Positions 1 through 7,629 of a stretch of 7,629 nucleotides of DNA are shown in pieces. The DNA is taken from assembly GCA_013416795.1 (NCBI GenBank), contig RQSC01001374.1, positions 1 through 7,629 of the forward strand, written 5' to 3'. Each line of letters opens with the position of its first letter. Positions within the stretch are counted from its first letter, which is position 1. A program made the position numbers and the translations under genes. Source of the DNA: Prasinococcaceae sp. CCMP 1430 (lineage: Eukaryota; Plantae; Prasinodermophyta). The notes under the pieces were generated by a model. It did no database searches. It was not told the origin of the DNA and saw nothing but the letters and a program-made list of their open reading frames with translations.

Positions 1-297
1 GTTGAGCGTGTAAGACCCTGTCAGATGCCACGCGGTGGGCACGTTGGTCAGGGCCAGGTCGGGTTGGATCAGGTATCGACACACCACCGTCGGCGCCGCG
101 CATTGGAACCCGAGGTACTCCGTGTACGAGGACCCCGCGGCCGAGCGCCAGGCCGTCGTGTACGCCTGAGTGTACGCCTGAAATGCGCGCCACGCCTCCC
201 ACCCCACCTGTTCCGAGCTCTTGATCACCGTGCCGTAGGTGCTGGTGTAAGCCGCGGACGTCAGGGTCGGGACCAGTCTGCCGTAGGGGACGCTCAG
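1..297 (-). other. Discoidin-like domain D6 (truncated by the window edge)
   Basis: LVPTLTS...GTVIKSSEQVGWEAWRAF...AWRSAAGSSYTEYLGFQCAAPTVVCRYLIQP...PTAWHLTGS aligns closely with D3. Confidence 0.75.
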
Positions 298-3200
298 TTT
301 CTTGTACATGATGAGATCCGTGATCCCCCCCATGTAGCTGCCGTGTCCGTGGTTACTGGTGGTCCTGAACTTGTATGTTTTATAGGCGGTGGTGTTGGTG
401 AAATCGCTGACGTGGGTACCACCCGCCATGTTGCCTATGGTATGGAGATCCACATCGGTGCTTTGGTTGGTGGTTCCCCTAAAGACCCCCGCTCGGGTAC
501 TGTAGGTATTCGGGACTAGAGTAGGAGTCAACAAATATCGATTCAACACCACGGGTTCGGTAAACGTATACCCAATGTAATGCGAGGTCGAGATGGTCGA
601 TGGAACCCAACTGTTTGTACCTGTATTATGCATAAAGGGGTTGCCACTGTAATTGGTCGAATAGGCTGTGGTATAAATGATCGAACCCGTCAATAACGCA
701 GTGTTTTGATTGTTGTAATTGGGCTCGACGGCTTCGTCATACAGGGTGTCAGGGGTCCGTTGGTAGAACCACAACTGGTTGAACCCGGCTTCGGCGCCGC
801 TGCCATAAGTAGTGTTTCCAACGACGAACTTGTATCCGTTGAACGCGATGCGGTTGTCAAATTTATGATTACCACATCTGACCGCAGTGCCCGAAGAGAA
901 CGTCATCAACAACACATCATCCACTCCATCGGTGTTGAAGCCATAAACAGAATACGAGTTGTATGACACTTGACCGGTGTACCAACCGTAGAACCCCATA
1001 CCATTGACCACGACCGGGGTGTTGAAACGGTATCCGATGTATTTCCCAGCGAAAAAGTTGCTGTTTGTGCCACCACTAGAGGGAGCACCACCAGGCAAAC
1101 TGACATACCAAACACCACCACCAGAGGAAAACGGTTTCCAAATGTTCGTAGTATCAGAGTTGGTGACGGTGACCCCCAGACCGCTGCTGGTGTTGGAGGT
1201 CAAGGCAGGGACCACAGACGTTCCTTCCGACGCAAACTGATTGAACAACGAATTGGAACCGAACGTGATCTGAGGCGCCGCGTGTACCGAGGTGCTGTTA
1301 AGACCTTCTAAAGTGTAGAATTGGAGCTTGTTGATTTGACCGTAATAGGATTGAGTGTTGGTGAGGGCATCGATGCGGATGCGATACACCTTGAAATAAG
1401 TAGAGTTGGACACCTCGAAGTACTGAGCGAGCGAGGAAGTGTTGTCGACGATGGTATGAAGTGTGGTTTCTGTTCCACCAACGGTATCAGAACCGGTGAG
1501 GTGCCATCCCAACGGGATTCGAGTGACGCCTTGAGAATCAAACGGTTGAATCATGTACCGAACCACACAGACCGGATACGTGTATTCGAACCCGAGGTAC
1601 TCGGTGTAAGTGGAACCATTGGCGGCGGTCCATCCGGCATGGGCACCGGTTCCAACCACCCCGACGTCAAAGGCACGCCAGGGTTCGTATCCAGCCTGAT
1701 AGGAGCTGTAGATCACCGTGCCGTTGGTCAGAGTATAAGTCGATCCGTCCAAGACCGACACCGTCGGGTATACTCCAGGAACCGAGCGACGGAACAATTG
1801 GAAGTATTGGATCTGTCCGAGGTTGGCACCACCTCGATTGGCATCGCTGTAGAGCTTAAAGGTGGTGTAGACGGCGGTGTTGGAGAAGTCGAAGGTGTAG
1901 ACAGCGCTAGAATCATACACCCCCGAGGAAAACGTATGGAGGGTGGTTTCTGATCCGCCGTTGGCACCGGTCAGATGGAACGTGATGGTGGCATTTGTGG
2001 ATGAGGACCCAATGCGGACGGCGTACCGTGTGACCAGAGTGGGTTTGTTGAAAATGTAGCCGATGTACTGAGTACCAGATGTGGTACCCAACCAGGAATT
2101 CGTTTCACCGGGATCATTGAAGGCAAATATAGCAACATATGTAGTATCATGACCACTCTCGATGATAGAACCAGTACCAAGGGTGGTCCCCAGGTTAAAG
2201 GAGGGTTCGATACATGGCTCAAACGGAACGGTCTCGGTGCTCTCATAGAACTGCAAAGCCTGAACGGACCCCTTTGAAGTATCGGAACCGTTGATGCCGT
2301 CGACGACCAGGTAATACACCAGGTACGCGGTGGTGTTGGCGAGGTCGACCATGAACGAGTTCTTAGCGGTGGCGTTGGTGCCGGTGTGGAGCAGAGTGGG
2401 GTCGTTGGTGGTCAAGGAGTTGGTGGCGAACAAGCGCCAATTGGTGACCCATTTCGTGCCATCGGCGACATCGTTGCCGACGAAATAGTAACGACGAACG
2501 GTCTTGGCCGTGGTGAATTGGTAACCGACGTAATGACCGGTGGTGGAGTCGGCGGCAGGAACCCAAGCGGTGGCGCGATCCCCGTCAAAGGCCTTGTAAC
2601 CATCGTAACCGGTGAGGGTGGAGTCGGTGACGACGGAACCGGTGGTGCCGGTGGCGGAAGTCAGAGTCTCGATGAGGGGGGTGTAGACGTTGGCGAACCC
2701 GTAACGGTCGGTAACGACGGACGGGACTCGGTTGGGAACGGATTTGACCACGACGGCGTCGGCGGATTTGATGATGTTGGTGGGTTTAATGGGGTCGACG
2801 GAGTACGCGTCGAACCACGCGACCGCCGATCCCGAGGTGACGGAGGTGACGGGGTCGAACCCGGTGGTCCAGGCCGCGGACGTCGGCGTGCTCCAACCAC
2901 CCACAGAGGTGGTCTGATCCCCCAAGAGGTATTGACCGCGCCAATAGTAGGTGGAGCCGGACACAAGGGCCGAGTACGGGACGACGTAGGAGTTGGCGCC
3001 GGGATCGGCGACCATGACGCTCCATAGGGGTGAGGTGAAGTCGGTGGAGAAACTGAGTTGGAACTGGACGTAGGAGTAACCACGGCTGCAAGTGGACAGG
3101 GTGAGCTTGGCGTTGTTCTGGTCGAGAGCGGTCGAGGCGTCGGCAGGGGAAGCGTTGGTGGGGGCGGCGACACCGGCGTTGTCCACGTATTGTTTGGTGG

Positions 3201-6200
3201 CGGCGTGGAGATTGGCGGTGGGGTCGGCACTGAGGGTCAATGCGCCCGTCATGGTATCACCGGCCTTGGCCACCGCGTAAGTGGCGAGATTGGTCGATCC
3301 GGCATAGACCGCAGAAGCGTATATGGAACCCGAGACCCCTAGGCCACCCGCGCTAATCACGACGGCACCGGTGGACGTAGAGGTGCTGGGAGTGGCACTG
3401 GAGAACGTCGTGACGCCCGTGACGGTACCGCCGGTCTTGAGAAGCGCCAGCCCGTCCTGAGTGTCCACGTACGTCTTGGTGACCAGGGCACTACCGTTGG
3501 AATAAATGGATCCGGTCACGTAGAGAGCTCCAGCCACGCCCATGCCGCCTGACACGACGAGGGCACCGGTGGTGGTGGAAGTGGACGTGGTCGTGGGATT
3601 CAACAGGAGCTGGGAGTTGCCGATGGTCATGGTGGAAGTCGTGCCATGGTAGAATTGATGAGACGCGGACGTGGTGGAGACCGAGTACCAGGTACCGGCC
3701 CCGTTGACCCCGAGCGCGTAATCGACAGAGCTACCACTCAGGTTGGGGTACAAGATGAGTCGGACGCCATTGGATCGGGTGGTGAAAGTGGGGCTAGCTA
3801 TGGCGGTGGACATGAGGGCCAGCATGCCCCCGTCGGTGGTCAGAACGACATCGCCGCTGACTTTGAGGGTGACATTAGAGGCCGCGTTGTTGGAGGGCCC
3901 CAGGCGATTGGTGGTGTTGGTGTAGATCGCTTTATCGGAAGTGAGTGTAGTGGCGGTGAGGGAGGCCGCGAACAAGGCGCCACCAACACCGATGCCTCCG
4001 GACACCAGGAGCGCACCGCTGCTAGTGGATGTCGAGGGGGCAGTGCCCAAGATTCGGGTGGAACCACTGGTGTTCGCGACGGACATCCAGGCACCCCCAG
4101 AGCTGGATTGTTGGAGGACAAAGCGAGCGGAGGTGGGGTCGTTGACAAAGTCCCATATGGAGTTGGAGGAGCGCAGGGAGAGGATGGTGGGTTTGGTGTT
4201 CGAAGAGCCCAGAGTCATGAGTCGGTTGGCATCCGCCGGATCAGTGCCGGCCGTGAAGGACCCAGAGGGAGTACCACGGACGGTGAGGGCACGACCGGTG
4301 ACGGTGGAGCCGGTGTTGTCGGGGTCGATAATGAGACCGGCGGTACAAGTTACGGGGCCTGTGAACGACGTGTTACCGGCTTTAGGGTACGCGAGGCCAT
4401 CCTGTGTATCGACGTACGATTTGGTGGCCAGGAGGGAACCGTTGGCGTAGACGCTCTGACCGACGTAGAGGTTCTTTGTGCACCCGATGCCTCCTTGAAC
4501 GGTAAGGGCACCGGTGGTCGAGGAGGTGGAATCGGTAGACGAGGAGACGGTCAGGACGCCGTTGGATTGGAGGGAGCCACAAGAGACGGAGGAGGTGGAG
4601 GTGACGGACGCCGCGTATAAAGCGCCAGCAACGCCCAGGCCACCCGATACGATCAGGGAACCAGTCGAAGTGGAAGTGGATGTAGTGGTGTCCAGGGCAC
4701 GAAGGGGTCCAGCGACCGAGAAAGATCCTGCTACAGCGAGACCACCCGAAACGACGAGAGCCCCAGTGGAGGCGGAAGTCGAGTTGGTGGAGTTGCTGAG
4801 GGTGACGACACCAGCGACATTGACTGCGCCACCGATACCGACGCCGCCCGCGACGGTCAAAGCGCCGGTAGAGGTCGAAGAGGACGCGGTGGCGTTGTTG
4901 ACATAGAGAGCATCAGTGATGGTGCCACCGGTGAAGGTGGAGAAGGTGTCGACGTAGGATTTGGTGGCGAGCTCGGCGTCGTTGGCGTAGACTTTACCAG
5001 CGACCCGGAGGTCGAGCGCCATACCAAGACCGCCCGAAACAACCAGAGCCCCGGTCGCGGCGGACGTGGAATTGGTGGCGTTAGAGAGAGACAGGACGGA
5101 CGTATAGGCGCCGAGATCGGCGACGAGTCGGGCGTCGACGGTGGTGTTGAGGTCAGAGATGGCGGACGCGCTGTGAGTGTGGTTGTCGAAGACGCGTTTG
5201 GTGAGCGGGTGGAGATCGGCGGACGCGTCGGCAGAGAGCACGAGGGCCCCCGTCATGGTGCCACCGGACTTTGGGAGGTACAGGGCGTCTTGAGTACCGA
5301 CGTACGAGGAGGTGGCGAGGGAGGCGGCGGTGATGCGCGCATCCACAGCGGCGGTGAATCCGGTGATGGCGGTAGATGCATGGGTGTGGCCGGACAGGGT
5401 GGAGTTCATTTGGGAGTAGGAGACAGGGTTGAGGTTGGCGGTGGCGTCGCCTTTGAGCACGAGGTCGCCCGTCATGGTGCCACCGGACTTGAGCAGCAAT
5501 CCAGAGGTGGCGTTGGTGACGTAAGCCTCGGTGGCGAGTTTTTGGGTGGAGTTCGCGTAGACGTCGCCACCGGCGTACAGTGCGCCCGTGAGTCCGAGGC
5601 CGCCATTGAGAGTGAGCGCCCCGGTGCTAGTAGAAGTGGACTCGACGGGAGTGCCGGTGGTGCCGATGGTGAACCGATTGCTGATCTTGAGCTGTTTGCG
5701 AACACCCAATCCGCCCGCGACGACCAGCGCCCCTGTAGAATAATCGGTCGCGTCGGTCGCGTCGAGCACGCGGGTGAGCCCGCCGATGTTGACGCGTTTG
5801 GCTACAGAGAGGCCGCCGGCGGTGACAATGGAACCCGTGGAGATCGAGGTCGATTCGGTGGCGTCGGTGGTTTTGACAGGGACGGCGAGGGCCTGAACGT
5901 CGGTGGCGACTTGGGCGGCGACGGCGGTGGAAAAGTCGGTGATGGCCGCGGCGCCGTGGGTGTGTGAGGTGACGGCGGTGTTCATTTGGGAAAGGGAGAC
6001 CGGGTGGAGGGAGGACGTGGCGTCGCCTTTGAGAACCAGGGCACCGGTCAGCGTACCGCCGGACTTGGGGAGGTAGTCGGCAAGGGCGGTCGTGACGGCG
6101 GACTGGGTGGCGAGTTTGGCGGTGGAGGACGCGTACGCGTCCCCAGAGAGGACCAGATCGCCTCCGACGGCCAAACCACCGCCCACGACCAGAGACCCGG

Positions 6201-7629
6201 TGGTGGTCGAGGTGGCGTTGGTGGTGGAAGAGATGCGGAGGTCTGTGCCGACTCGAAGTTGTTTCGCGACACCCAGTCCGCCGGCAACGACGACCGCACC
6301 GGTGGTTGTGCTGGTCGCGTCGGTCGTGGAGGCGACCGAGAGCACACCTCCGACCGTGGCGTTCGCGCCGACGGCAAGGCCTCCTGATGCGACCAGGGCT
6401 CCGGTGGAGGTCGATGTGCTTTGAGTAGCGTCGGTGGTCTTGACGGCGACCGAGAGGTTTGGCAGGAGGGCGGCGACACGGGCGTCGACCGCATCGGACA
6501 GGTCGGTGACGTCGGCGGCGACATGAGAATGGGAAGAGATTGCGGTGTCGTGTTGGGATTTGGTGACCGGATGAAGGTCAGCCGTGGCGTCACCCGCCAA
6601 AACCAAGGCACCGGTTAGCGTCCCGCCGGCAAGATCGAGTTTGAGGGCGGCGGCCGTGTCTACGTACGATTGAGTGGCGAGTTGGGTGGGTCCGAAGATG
6701 TCGCCCGCTACACGGACGTCTCCCCCGACGCCAACGCCGCCCGTGACCGTCAGGGCCCCGGTAGAGGTGGATGTGGTGGCGGTAGTGTCAGTGATAGAGA
6801 GAGGAGTGGTGATCGCGGACCCGCCGAATTGCAGGCCGCTGATGGCCGTGGTGACGTAACCCTGGGTCGCTAGCTGCGACCCATTGGCGTAATACTGGCC
6901 CGAGGCCCGAACGTCGCCCCCGACGCCGACGCCGCCGCCGACGACCAGAGACCCGGTGGTGATCGAGGTAGATGCGGTGGTCGACGTGGTCTTGATGGCT
7001 GTCGACAGTGACCCGACGTCCGCGGCGACACGGGCATCGACGGCCGTATTTAAGTCGGTAATCGCCGTGGACGCATGGGTATGTGAGGACACGACAGAGT
7101 CGAGTTGTTGCTTGGGAACGGCGTGGAGAGCAGAAGTAGCGTTACCCGCAAGGGTCAAGGATCCTGAAAGGGTGCCACCAGCCAGTGGTAACAGAAGGTC
7201 GTCCTGGTCATCGACGTACGAGCGGGTTGCTAGTTTCAGCGCGCCCCCGGTGACATAAGCATCGCCACCAACAACCAGGTCGCCACCAACACCAAGACCA
7301 CCGCCAAGCACCACGGACCCTGTGGTCGTCGAAGTGGCTGAGGTGGTGTTGCTAACGACGAGCCGCCCCCCGACTTCCAATGCACCACCAACGCCCATAC
7401 CACCAACTGTCGTCAGAGCTCCCGTGGTGGTGGAAGTGGAGGCGGTGGAATCGGTGACATGGATTGGGACAGCAAGAGACTGCACGGCAACAGCGGTCCG
7501 AGCATCGACGGCATCGCTAAGGCCGACGACCTTGGTAGGTAAATGGGTGTGATCGGAAGGGGCGATGTTGGCTGCTATCCATTCTCGGGTCGAAACCTGC
7601 TCGGCACCGATGTAACAGGCGGCGCCTGC
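1..7629 (-). CDS. Giant fibre/adhesin-like protein, internal fragment (at least 2543 aa, both ends outside the window): repetitive tail-fibre shaft, Fn3-like domain and tandem discoidin-like domains
   Basis: Hand translation of the reverse complement from 7629 gives no stop codon down to base 1 (AGAACYIGAEQVSTREWIAA...VPTAWHLTGSYTLN). The protein is coherent, repetitive and T/S/G/A/V-rich, with mostly C/G at third codon positions. No minus-strand ORF in the supplied track uses this frame, which fits the frame never closing. Confidence 0.97.
158..181. repeat. Perfect 12-bp tandem duplication (in frame, QAYT-QAYT)
   Basis: gtgtacgcctga occurs at 158-169 and again at 170-181. Confidence 0.95.
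298..756 (-). other. Discoidin-like domain D5
   Basis: EPNYN...TGSII...PF...TNSW...HYIGYTFTEPVVLNRYLL...DLHT...FTNTTAYKTYKF...TDLIMYKK. Confidence 0.72.
757..1221 (-). other. Discoidin-like domain D4 (preceded by a 29-aa linker at 1222-1308)
   Basis: VVPALTSN...IWKPF...VW...KYIGYRFNTPVVVNG...YSVYGFN...LLMT...FDNRIAFNGYKFVV...NQLWFYQR. Confidence 0.7.
1309..1785 (-). other. Discoidin-like domain D3
   Basis: GTVIYSSYQAGYEPWRAFD...GWTAANGSTYTEYLGFEYTYPVCVVRYMIQP...PLGWHLTGSD...TLHT...SNSTYFKVYRIRI...NKLQFYTL. Confidence 0.78.
1786..2238 (-). other. Discoidin-like domain D2
   Basis: EPSFN...TGSII...FAFND...NSW...QYIGYIFNKPTLVTRYAV...FHLTGANGGSETTLHT...SNTAVYTTFKL...YFQLFRR has the same motif order as D1. 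Confidence 0.72.
2239..2688 (-). other. Discoidin/F5-8 type C-like domain D1
   Basis: PLIETLTS...YKAFDGDRATAWVP...HYVGYQFTTAKTVRRYYF...NWRLFATN...LLHT...NTTAYLVYYLVV...QALQFYES carries the AFDG-x4-W and final Q-F-Y hallmarks of the galactose-binding-like jelly roll. Confidence 0.8.
2863..3168 (-). other. Fibronectin type III-like domain (about 102 aa)
   Basis: APTNASPADAST...YVQFQLSFSTDFTSPLW...ALVSGSTYYWRGQY...GGWSTPTSAAWTT matches the microbial Fn3 pattern P-x3-SP...Q-x-S-x3-F-x-S...L-x-x-G-x-x-YYWR...WS...(F/W)TT. Confidence 0.75.
3601..3939 (-). other. Unique beta-rich insert B within the shaft (about 113 aa)
   Basis: SDKAIYTNTTNRLG...ASPTFTTRSNGVRLILYPNLSGSSVDYALGVNGAGTWYSVSTTSASHQFYHGTTSTMTIGNSQLLL is non-repetitive and flanked on both sides by STSTG repeats. 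Confidence 0.6.
4048..4341 (-). other. Unique beta-rich insert A within the shaft (about 98 aa)
   Basis: AGLIIDPDNTGSTVTGRALTVRG...ILSLRSSNSIWDFVNDPTSARFVLQQSSSGGAWMSVANTSGSTRIL interrupts the repeat pattern and has alternating hydrophobic strands with aromatic residues. Confidence 0.6.
5173..7551 (-). repeat. Six His-x-His 'phage tail repeat'-like motifs marking super-repeat units
   Basis: HTH 7551-7543, HTH 7083-7075, HSH 6531-6523, HTH 5964-5956, HTH 5388-5380 and HTH 5181-5173. Each is followed by x4-(I/V)-x-(D/G)-(L/F)-x-x-(A/T)-V-(D/A)-A-(R/Q), which resembles the PTR-type (Pfam PF12789) phage tail repeat. Family assignment is from recall; no HMM was run. Confidence 0.8.

What the first reader, a model, noticed from the sequence alone, without database searches (positions are those of the whole stretch)
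1..7629. Hidden gene of at least 2543 aa, absent from the ORF track: a fibre shaft fused to an Fn3 domain and a chain of at least 6 lectin-like domains
Seen: one stop-free minus-strand frame covers the whole window, and every listed ORF is a shadow of it. Established: LATxxYVD necks, GGTMTG segments and HxH motifs are typical of homotrimeric phage fibres, which usually end in one trimeric tip domain or a peptidase-S74 chaperone. Inference: this shaft instead ends in an Fn3 domain followed by beads-on-a-string discoidin domains. If trimeric, each fibre would carry three arms and at least 18 putative glycan-binding modules. That 'multivalent mop' is a layout I do not recognise from characterised fibres. 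Scaling from T4 gp34 (about 1290 aa, about 70 nm) suggests a shaft of roughly 80 nm or more.
Basis: partly seen in the sequence, partly recalled or inferred. Interest (0 to 1): 0.8.

Follow-up and report, generated by a model that had tools for sequence, protein, structure and literature searches.

The report
Giant viral fibre with lectin chain
The window is an internal piece of one very large gene (at least 2543 codons) for a virus-type attachment fibre whose repetitive shaft runs into a chain of at least six sugar-binding-type (discoidin/CBM32-like) domains; it is real and has no close relatives, but it is a new combination of known building blocks, not a new kind of machine.

Summary
One minus-strand frame is stop-free over all 7629 nt, and the other five frames carry 24-155 stops. 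The ORF is open at both ends, which is why the ORF list omits it.

Residues 1-1486 form a Thr/Ser/Gly/Ala-rich shaft:
- 18 copies of a ~32-aa repeat;
- five 73-aa neck/knob units with GGT(L/M)TG and HxH motifs;
- one ~150-aa module.

Residues 1645-2543 hold six tandem ~150-aa domains. One of them models confidently (pLDDT 87) as a CBM32/discoidin beta-sandwich. Of their long relatives, 52 of 55 are Pfam F5/8 type C proteins.

The Fn3 call is not confirmed: no family hit, and the model scored pLDDT 32.

The best shaft relatives lie in giant-virus (NCLDV) contigs and in a phiKZ-like jumbo phage. The best discoidin relatives are phage tail proteins, one carrying six such domains. None of about 260 retrieved relatives combines this shaft with this chain.

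Fibres carrying lectin arrays are, however, already described in polinton-like viruses, giant-virus genomic islands and phages. Because both gene ends lie outside the window, "ends in beads instead of a tip or chaperone" cannot be claimed. Trimer state and fibre length are untested.

Verdict: a new variant of a known kind, of moderate interest.

The parts
1..7629 (-). Internal part of one ORF, 2543 codons, open at both ends (N-terminus and C-terminus lie outside the window)
   Evidence: 0 stops in minus frame 0 against 24-155 in the other frames; P(no stop) about 3e-31; homologues at E down to 1e-188.
4990..7629 (-). Shaft part A, aa 1-880. About 190-aa super-repeats, each made of 1-3 copies of the ~32-aa repeat plus a 73-aa neck/knob unit. 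That unit reads LATxSYV, then GGT(L/M)TG, then LHPV, then HxH, then ITDLxxAVDARV. The five units lie at 7015-7233, 6463-6681, 5896-6114, 5320-5538 and 5113-5319.
   Evidence: Motif scan. Layout. Alignment A3 has 71% mean column identity. Weak PDB profile hits at E about 0.02 to tail collar fibre gp4 (9d93) and phage hyaluronidase HylP1. The unit recurs 10-25 times in P0149-type proteins.
4360..4989 (-). Shaft part B, aa 881-1090. A run of five ~32-aa Thr/Ser-rich, Gly-containing repeats bounded by two LATKSYVD necks.
   Evidence: Profile search finds 18 strong repeat copies across the shaft, E 1e-12 to 1e-17 (alignment A4). No PDB sequence match for the repeat.
4078..4359 (-). aa 1091-1184: non-repetitive stretch of the shaft, fold unassigned
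   Evidence: No Pfam, PHROG or NCBIfam hit.
3595..4077 (-). aa 1185-1345: one copy of a ~150-aa module that recurs 5-9 times or more in giant fibre proteins of relatives (P0144, P0145, P0151, P0152, P0155, P0168)
   Evidence: BLASTP at 41% identity to several copies in P0144. Local phmmer. tblastn hit to the Synechococcus phage S-SCSM2R 'large exoprotein', aa 1267-1341.
3172..3594 (-). aa 1346-1486: last shaft segment, with two ~32-aa repeats, one neck, and a terminal GDTMTG...AATKQYVD motif
   Evidence: PHROG tail-fibre families, phrog_16641 at 1.4e-8. 72% identity over 39 aa to Streptomyces phage proteins, one annotated tailspike.
   Evidence: No Pfam, NCBIfam, PHROG or PDB hit. Single-sequence AF2 gave pLDDT 31.6. 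No homologue in the 1.84-billion-protein scan.
2698..2829 (-). aa 1601-1644: linker between the Fn3-like segment and the first discoidin-like domain
   Evidence: Lies outside the domain repeats. A ~35-aa motif spanning aa 1587-1621 (it begins in the preceding Fn3-like segment) matches a 13-fold repeat in P0054.
2230..2697 (-). D1, aa 1645-1800: discoidin/CBM32-like domain
   Evidence: Internal homology. Weak Pfam F5_F8_type_C, 1.8e-4 and 22 bits against a cut-off of 28.2. NCBIfam NADase_discoid at 7.7e-4.
1774..2229 (-). D2, aa 1801-1952: discoidin/CBM32-like domain
   Evidence: Internal homology; relatives.
1300..1773 (-). D3, aa 1953-2110: discoidin/CBM32-like domain (the one modelled)
   Evidence: AF2 pLDDT 86.9, pTM 0.86. 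Foldseek against PDB gives CBM32 and discoidin entries, prob 1.0, TM 0.65-0.72. BFVD gives giant-virus and phage F5/8 proteins, TM 0.7-0.78. phrog_17517 'tail protein' at 2.8e-33.
736..1248 (-). D4, aa 2128-2298: the most divergent discoidin-like domain, with a Gly/Ser-rich loop insertion. It follows a 17-aa linker at nt 1249-1299.
   Evidence: Internal homology, E 1e-3 to 2e-6; alignment.
289..735 (-). D5, aa 2299-2447: discoidin/CBM32-like domain
   Evidence: Internal homology.
1..288 (-). D6, aa 2448-2543: first ~96 residues of a sixth discoidin-like domain, cut by the window end
   Evidence: 52% identity to D3; E 2e-20.

Best explanation
The window encodes the middle of a virion attachment fibre (adhesin) of a large double-stranded DNA virus. 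The virus is either a giant virus or polinton-like virus of a protist or alga, or a large tailed phage; the data do not decide, with a slight lean to the former.

Shown:
- It is one continuous coding frame.
- Its first ~1486 residues are built from repeat units shared with very long fibre proteins of giant viruses and jumbo phages.
- Residues 1645 onward form a chain of at least six discoidin/CBM32-type beta-sandwich domains.

Inferred:
- The shaft assembles as a parallel homotrimer, as solved phage fibres carrying the same GGTMTG and HxH motifs do, and acts as a long spacer.
- The discoidin-like domains, which have diverged to 23-52% identity, bind cell-surface glycans weakly one by one. Together they give avidity and possibly a broadened specificity in the first, reversible attachment step.

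What lies beyond D6 is unknown: more domains, a trimeric tip, an S74 chaperone or an enzyme.
For: - Coding frame.
- Shaft relatives: 451 long proteins at E <= 1e-3, best 1e-188.
- Contexts of those relatives: NCLDV major capsid, chitinase and RNR; Topo II, TFIIS and PIF1; HSP70 and photolyase; Ulp1-like protease, ligase and RNR; a phiKZ-like jumbo phage with RNAP beta and virion PHROGs.
- Several relatives end in Peptidase_S74.
- Shaft units hit tail-fibre PHROGs. Weakly, they also hit solved trimeric phage fibres: 9d93 gp4 and HylP1.
- C-terminal domains: 143 relatives in 1.84 billion representatives; 52 of 55 long ones are Pfam F5_F8_type_C.
- The D3 model at pLDDT 87 matches CBM32 and discoidin structures, several of them solved with bound galactose or GalNAc.
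- The closest sequence relatives sit in phage tail modules. P0028, with six discoidin domains, lies directly after the tape-measure, Dit and Sipho_Gp37 genes. P0017 carries a phage fibre repeat.
- Literature:
  - F5/8, YadA, collagen and S74 adhesion proteins are enriched in giant-virus genomic islands (PMC13620141).
  - PLV fibres reach 3.9k aa and carry arrays of up to seven lectin domains (PMC12220804).
  - CBMs decorate siphophage adhesion devices (PMC7291167).
Against: - No neighbouring genes are visible and neither protein end is in the window, so virion association rests wholly on relatives at 25-46% local identity.
- The source contig and any close relative are absent from every collection searched.
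- The large E-values for shaft relatives are inflated by repeats. Single HSPs cover only 4-69% of the query.
- Pfam does not call any of the six domains at its own threshold.
- Sugar binding, trimerisation and the geometry of the domain chain were not tested.
- Codon usage (GC3 0.72, strongly C-ending) differs from all relatives' loci but one.
Confidence: 0.7

Rival explanations
1. Fibre-borne glycan-degrading enzyme (a depolymerase-type fibre). The CBM32-like chain would be a substrate-targeting array in front of a catalytic domain that lies beyond the window's end, as in multi-CBM32 bacterial glycoside hydrolases. It would not be the terminal receptor-binding part itself.
For: The top structural matches are CBM32 modules taken from large glycoside hydrolases: EndoD, NanJ, GH84C, GH89 CBM32-5, GH31 and chitosanase. 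The C-terminus is missing. The shaft unit weakly matches phage hyaluronidase HylP1, an enzyme that is itself a fibre.
Against: No catalytic domain is seen anywhere in 2543 residues. The discoidin relatives found are mostly arrays with no recognised enzyme domain. In P0028 and P0017 the chain runs to, or close to, the C-terminus.
Confidence: 0.12
2. Cellular (bacterial) surface adhesin or giant exoprotein, not a virion component. It would be a fibrous stalk presenting lectin domains on a cell surface.
For: Some relatives carry source names such as 'trimeric autotransporter adhesin' (P0219) and 'large exoprotein'. Giant-virus adhesion proteins cluster phylogenetically with bacterial ones (PMC13620141). 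The high-GC3 codon usage is unlike the viral loci examined.
Against: Every relative whose neighbourhood could be interpreted lies among virus genes. A scan of 185,579 species genomes with six peptides from the C-terminal half found no relative. No YadA, autotransporter or secretion domain was found.
Confidence: 0.1
3. Capsid-surface fibril or decoration protein that coats the particle, in the manner of mimivirus fibrils or phage head fibres, and not a vertex or tail receptor-binding fibre. The lectin chain would give non-specific stickiness to glycans or mucus-like matrices.
For: The whole-protein PHROG scan hits phrog_3018 'head decoration protein' (3.6e-23) and phrog_697 'structural protein'. 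Giant viruses lack tails, and their fibrils bind sugars (PMC13620141).
Against: More PHROG hits, and the strongest one, are to tail or tail-fibre families. The closest discoidin relatives lie in tail modules. This rival differs from the best explanation in location more than in mechanism.
Confidence: 0.15

Closest known systems
Uncharacterised siphophage tail protein P0028 (1517 aa, metagenomic), and P0017 (1378 aa, with a Pfam phage fibre repeat)
   Same: Chains of 4-6 tandem discoidin (F5/8 type C) domains in a virus adhesion protein. They are detectable sequence relatives of D1-D6 at about 29% identity. P0028 lies immediately after the tape-measure, Dit and Sipho_Gp37 genes.
   Different: They have no long Thr/Ser/Gly-rich shaft and none of the neck or HxH units. 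They are half the length or less, and they lie in AT-rich genomes.
Giant fibre proteins of metagenomic giant viruses (P0144 2640 aa, P0146 2866 aa, P0147 4213 aa, P0148 3700 aa)
   Same: The same ~32-aa shaft repeat and the same ~150-aa module, 35-46% identity locally. Comparable size.
   Different: None carries the discoidin chain. P0146 and P0148 end in Peptidase_S74. The module is repeated about nine times in P0144 against once here.
phiKZ-like jumbo-phage protein P0149 (2052 aa) and the DUF2793 protein group P0154-P0189
   Same: The neck/knob unit (LATxxYV, then GGTLTG) recurs 10-25 times in them. P0149's contig carries phage RNAP beta and virion proteins.
   Different: They have no HxH motif and no discoidin domains.
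Modular fibre proteins of polinton-like viruses (PMC12220804)
   Same: Very long fibre proteins, up to 3.9k aa, with arrays of up to seven lectin-type domains. They are described as bacteriophage-like fibres used for host attachment.
   Different: The arrays there are Laminin_G_3, and discoidin occurs only singly or in pairs. Most end in an S74 chaperone, whereas the end of this protein is unknown.
CBM32 modules of bacterial glycoside hydrolases (for example PDB 2xqx, 4zxe, 2v72, 2j1a, 4a41/4a44) and eukaryotic discoidin domains (muskelin 4pqq, CASPR2 5y4m)
   Same: Same beta-sandwich fold, TM 0.65-0.72 and Foldseek probability 1.0. Several were solved with bound galactose or GalNAc. Tandem CBM32 arrays exist in these enzymes.
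   Different: Only 9-23% identity. No direct sequence hit in the PDB. They are attached to enzymes or signalling proteins, not to a fibre shaft.
Solved trimeric phage fibres: tail collar fibre gp4 (9d93) and phage hyaluronidase HylP1 (2c3f, 2dp5, 2yvv)
   Same: They share short motifs with the 73-aa unit: HxH followed by (I/V)TDLxxA, and GG(V/T)(M/L)TG(Q/A)L.
   Different: E about 0.02 only, covering 20-45 residues. The main ~32-aa shaft repeat has no PDB match at all.
T4 long tail fibre protein gp34
   Same: Only the general idea of a very long repetitive fibre protein.
   Different: No search returned it. The PDB sequence searches of the shaft gave nothing. The nearest hit of that kind is phrog_21722, 'long tail fiber protein distal subunit', at E 0.0046 over ~70 residues. 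The length scaling from gp34 is therefore unsupported.

Membership tests
F5/8 type C (discoidin) / CBM32 domain family | Match to Pfam PF00754 at its gathering score | tested here: not met
   The whole protein scores 16 bits. D1 alone scores 22 bits against a cut-off of 28.2. D2-D6 give no hit.
F5/8 type C (discoidin) / CBM32 domain family | Significant sequence homology to bona fide members | tested here: met
   phmmer gives 143 relatives, best 9e-24. 52 of 55 long relatives pass PF00754, up to 1.8e-44, at the aligned positions.
F5/8 type C (discoidin) / CBM32 domain family | Distorted beta-sandwich (galactose-binding-domain-like) fold | tested here: met
   The D3 model has pLDDT 86.9. The 50 matches listed are almost all CBM32, discoidin or other galactose-binding-like domains (201 matches at E <= 0.001), prob 1.0, TM 0.6-0.73. 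Only D3 was modelled; the other five are inferred from homology.
F5/8 type C (discoidin) / CBM32 domain family | Ligand (glycan) binding in the loops at one end of the sandwich | not testable with these tools
   The loops are the most variable part among D1-D6. No ligand modelling was available.
Homotrimeric phage-type tail fibre | Sequence repeats or motifs of known fibre families | tested here: met
   PHROG tail-fibre families at 1.4e-8 to 7e-4 on isolated units. Peptidase_S74-bearing relatives. Marginal PDB hits to trimeric fibres.
Homotrimeric phage-type tail fibre | Parallel trimeric assembly of the shaft | not testable with these tools
Homotrimeric phage-type tail fibre | Gene sits in a tail or baseplate module | not testable with these tools
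   The window lies wholly inside the gene. The source contig was not found in any collection.
Homotrimeric phage-type tail fibre | C-terminal trimeric tip or S74 intramolecular chaperone | not testable with these tools
   The C-terminus lies beyond window position 1.
Fibronectin type III domain | Match to an Fn3 profile, or a seven-strand Ig-like sandwich model | tested here: inconclusive
   No Pfam, NCBIfam, PHROG or PDB hit even at E up to 5-10. The AF2 single-sequence model is beta-rich but scores pLDDT 31.6.
Giant-virus / PLV surface adhesion fibre | Encoded in a genome with NCLDV or PLV hallmark genes | tested here: inconclusive
   This holds for the relatives P0144, P0146, P0147 and P0148. 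Other relatives are phage-borne. The window's own genome is unknown.

The most novel reading that the evidence does not exclude
A parallel trimeric shaft that stops being trimeric at the Fn3-like junction and splays into three independent arms. Each arm would be a flexible string of six or more diverged CBM32-like lectin modules, giving 18 or more glycan-binding sites per fibre. That would be an avidity-based 'mop' with several specificities, a receptor-binding design not yet seen in any structurally characterised virus fibre. It may belong to a high-GC3 giant virus lineage absent from current collections.
Probability: 0.25. Interest if true: 0.6.

Novelty: new variant of a known kind. Interest (0 to 1): 0.42.

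Why it matters
How giant viruses, polinton-like viruses and many environmental phages first attach to their hosts is poorly understood. The long modular adhesion genes in their hypervariable regions are the main candidates.

This gene shows the same construction kit being shuffled across virus realms. Its shaft repeats are shared with giant viruses and a jumbo phage, and its lectin chain is shared with phage tail proteins. It also has an unusually long lectin array and no close relative among about 15 billion predicted proteins.

If the chain is a set of free multivalent arms, it would be a useful model for avidity-driven glycan recognition by viruses. If not, it is one more member of a growing catalogue of modular virus fibres.

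Tried and rejected
**Finding the source contig or a close relative. All attempts failed.**
- megablast and tblastn against 50,697 phage records;
- IMG/VR, twice;
- GTDB species genomes;
- JGI metagenomes.

The gene's neighbours therefore remain unknown. The look-up of encoding contigs could not be applied to the window's own protein, because it is not read through to a stop.

**Fn3.** Single-sequence AF2 failed at pLDDT 31.6. Pfam, NCBIfam, PHROG and PDB searches of the isolated segment were empty. I did not run a fold search on that model because it would be meaningless.

**Shaft fold.** Neither the whole shaft nor the 18-copy repeat profile has a PDB sequence match.

**Real genes on the opposite strand or in other frames.** Rejected. 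The six longest alternative ORFs have no Pfam hit, and their length is what an antisense frame of a strongly biased ORF produces.

**Using GC3 to assign a host.** Only one relative (P0145, GC3 0.69) resembles the window. Its 12-kb contig is uninformative, so no assignment was made.

**A second costly word-index protein search for the C-terminal half.** Judged redundant after the exhaustive representative scan, and not run.
Full report
**1. Observation**

The minus-strand frame that starts at base 7629 has no stop in 2543 codons. The other five frames have 24-155 stops. From base composition about 69 stops are expected, so P is about 3e-31. The longest open run in 200 shuffles was 320 codons.

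The ORF list holds only 35 short ORFs of 60-324 aa, because that tool omits ORFs that run off the ends. The six longest alternatives have no Pfam match. The 'hidden gene' is therefore real, and it is incomplete at both ends.

Its product is 15% Thr, 11% each of Gly, Ser and Ala, and has only 10 Cys.

**2. Anatomy**

Residues 1-1486 form a repetitive shaft.
- A profile built from the protein itself finds 18 strong copies of a ~32-aa Thr/Ser-rich, Gly-containing repeat (alignment A4).
- Five 73-aa neck/knob units align at 71% mean column identity. Each reads LATxSYV, GGT(L/M)TG, LHPV, HxH, ITDLxxAVDARV (A3). With the ~32-aa repeats they form ~190-aa super-repeats in residues 27-880.
- Residues 1185-1345 are a single ~150-aa module.
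- The shaft ends in a GDTMTG...AATKQYVD motif.

Residues 1487-1600 are a non-repetitive, beta-rich segment.

Six mutually homologous ~150-aa domains follow, D1-D6 at aa 1645-2543. The last is truncated by the window end. D1-D3 align collinearly with D4-D6 at 37% identity over 384 columns, and D3/D6 share 52%. This points to duplication of a three-domain block.

**3. What the C-terminal domains are**

Pfam alone is not decisive. Only D1 gives a sub-threshold F5_F8_type_C hit of 22 bits against a cut-off of 28.2. Three other lines of evidence agree.
- An exhaustive phmmer scan of 1.84 billion cluster representatives with residues 1489-2543 found 143 relatives, best 9e-24, at about 28-31% identity.
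- Of the 55 longest relatives, 52 are bona fide F5_F8_type_C proteins, usually with 2-6 tandem copies.
- An AlphaFold2 model of D3, built on a 26-row alignment, has pLDDT 86.9 and pTM 0.86. By Foldseek it matches CBM32 modules and discoidin domains, with probability 1.0 and TM 0.65-0.72. Several of those were solved with galactose or GalNAc bound.

Against predicted viral structures it matches two groups at TM 0.7-0.78:
- multi-domain 'galactose-binding', 'F5/8 type C' and 'Fn3-domain' giant proteins of Tetraselmis virus 1 and Bathycoccus viruses;
- phage proteins, including Bacillus phage G gp365 and Siphoviridae F5/8 proteins.

The 'lectin-like jelly-roll' reading is therefore supported. Actual sugar binding is an inference.

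**4. The Fn3 claim**

The segment gave no hit in Pfam, NCBIfam, PHROGs or the PDB, even at permissive thresholds. It has no detectable homologue in the big scan. Its single-sequence model is unusable at pLDDT 31.6. The claim is neither confirmed nor refuted.

**5. What the shaft is, and where its relatives live**

A word-index search scored on residues 1-1488 returned 451 long proteins. The best were 1e-188 to 1e-126, but these E-values are inflated by repeats, and single local alignments cover 4-69% of the query at 25-52% identity.

Neighbourhoods of relatives:

| Relative | Length | Neighbouring genes | Reading |
|---|---|---|---|
| P0144 | 2640 aa | NCLDV major capsid protein, GH18 chitinase, RNR small subunit, dCMP deaminase | giant virus |
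| P0146 | 2866 aa | Topo II, TFIIS, thymidylate synthase, PIF1 | giant virus |
| P0147 | 4213 aa | HSP70, photolyase | giant virus |
| P0148 | 3700 aa | Ulp1-like protease, DNA ligase, RNR large subunit | giant virus |
| P0149 | 2052 aa | phage RNA polymerase beta subunit, phiKZ-type virion PHROGs (200-kb contig) | jumbo phage |

- P0149 holds 25 copies of the neck unit.
- The 150-aa module is repeated about 5-9 times or more in P0144, P0145, P0151, P0152, P0155 and P0168.
- Isolated shaft units hit tail-fibre PHROGs at 1.4e-8 to 7e-4.
- The 73-aa unit profile weakly matches two solved trimeric phage fibres, tail collar fibre gp4 (9d93) and hyaluronidase HylP1, at E about 0.02.
- The main ~32-aa repeat has no solved relative.

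The shaft is thus made of fibre building blocks used by both giant viruses and phages. Which kind of virus carries this gene is open.

Codon usage does not help. GC3 is 0.72 and C3 is 0.52, whereas relatives' genes have GC3 of 0.06-0.36, except P0145 at 0.69.

**6. Is the combination new?**

None of the 120 listed shaft relatives contains the discoidin-like domain. None of the 143 discoidin relatives contains the shaft motifs. The longest discoidin relative is 1517 aa. No close relative of either half exists in the phage, IMG/VR, GTDB or JGI collections. This particular fusion was not found elsewhere.

The design class is known, however.
- P0028 is a siphophage protein with six discoidin domains. 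It lies directly after the tape-measure, Dit and Sipho_Gp37 genes and before a lysin.
- P0017 joins a phage fibre repeat to four discoidin domains.
- Polinton-like viruses encode fibre proteins of up to 3.9k aa with arrays of up to seven Laminin_G_3 lectin domains, usually followed by a terminal S74 chaperone (PMC12220804).
- F5/8, YadA, collagen and S74 'surface adhesion' genes are enriched in the hypervariable genomic islands of giant viruses (PMC13620141).
- Prasinovirus hypervariable regions carry phage-tail-fibre and lectin genes (PMC12906663).
- CBM decoration of siphophage adhesion devices is well documented (PMC7291167).

**7. Mechanism**

Shown:
- a continuous frame;
- a repeat shaft homologous to virus fibre proteins;
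- a chain of at least six CBM32/discoidin-fold domains.

Inferred:
- The shaft is a parallel trimer serving as a long spacer.
- The diverged lectin-type domains bind host surface glycans with low individual affinity and high collective avidity, mediating the first reversible attachment.

The C-terminus lies outside the window, and published arrays of this sort often precede an S74 domain.

The '18 modules' figure and the '80 nm' length depend on untested trimerisation and on a scaling from T4 gp34, which no search returned as a relative.

Rival readings:
- a depolymerase-type fibre with a catalytic domain beyond the window;
- a cellular adhesin;
- a capsid-coating fibril.

**8. Verdict**

This is a real, very large, orphan-like viral fibre gene. 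It has an unusually long discoidin/CBM32 chain fused to a giant-virus/jumbo-phage-type shaft. It is a new variant of a known kind of modular virus adhesin, of moderate interest (0.42).

The most novel reading still open is a trimeric shaft splaying into three free multivalent lectin arms. It is worth testing by multimer prediction and by recovering the whole gene.

Noticed in passing
window 1-7629 (minus-strand codons): Codon usage is unusual. GC3 is 0.715 with a strong preference for C-ending codons (C3 0.52; ACC, GCC, TCC, GTC, CTC), yet Lys, Gln and Glu codons are near-even between A and G. Window GC falls from about 0.66 over the shaft to about 0.49-0.54 over the domain chain. Among relatives' loci only P0145 (L004) has similar GC3 (0.69).
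   Followed up: partly
window 1-2697 (aa 1645-2543): D1-D3 and D4-D6 align collinearly at 37% identity over 384 columns, with an offset of about 490 aa. D3/D6 share 52% and D2/D5 share 35%. This suggests duplication of a three-domain block, so further domains may follow beyond the window end.
   Followed up: partly
window + strand, e.g. 3646-4620, 5173-5967: The directly antisense frame has only 24 stops and yields ORFs of up to 324 aa. None has a Pfam hit. They look like shadows of the biased coding frame.
   Followed up: yes
window ~2767-2871 (aa 1587-1621): A ~35-aa stretch at the junction of the Fn3-like segment and the linker matches a motif that recurs 13 times with a 67-aa period in an unrelated 1010-aa protein (P0054). 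P0054 itself has no NCBIfam hit.
   Followed up: no
L004:880-9969 (P0145): This 3029-aa relative has gene GC of 0.577 against 0.444 in its flanks. Its neighbour has a PB1 domain, which is typically eukaryotic. The fibre gene may be compositionally foreign to its contig.
   Followed up: no
L012:1-23902: Four very large same-strand genes lie in a row (over 3594, 2179, 2662 and 1634 aa). Two of them, plus a small neighbour, carry Laminin_G_3 lectin domains. This may be a cluster of giant fibre and lectin genes.
   Followed up: no
L009:2278-16246: In an NCLDV-like contig, two Peptidase_S74-bearing fibre genes (1296 and 2866 aa) flank a thymidylate synthase gene.
   Followed up: no
window 1-7629 (protein): There are 38 N-x-S/T sequons against about 29 expected from composition. 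This is a mild excess, of possible relevance only if the protein is made in a eukaryotic host.
   Followed up: no
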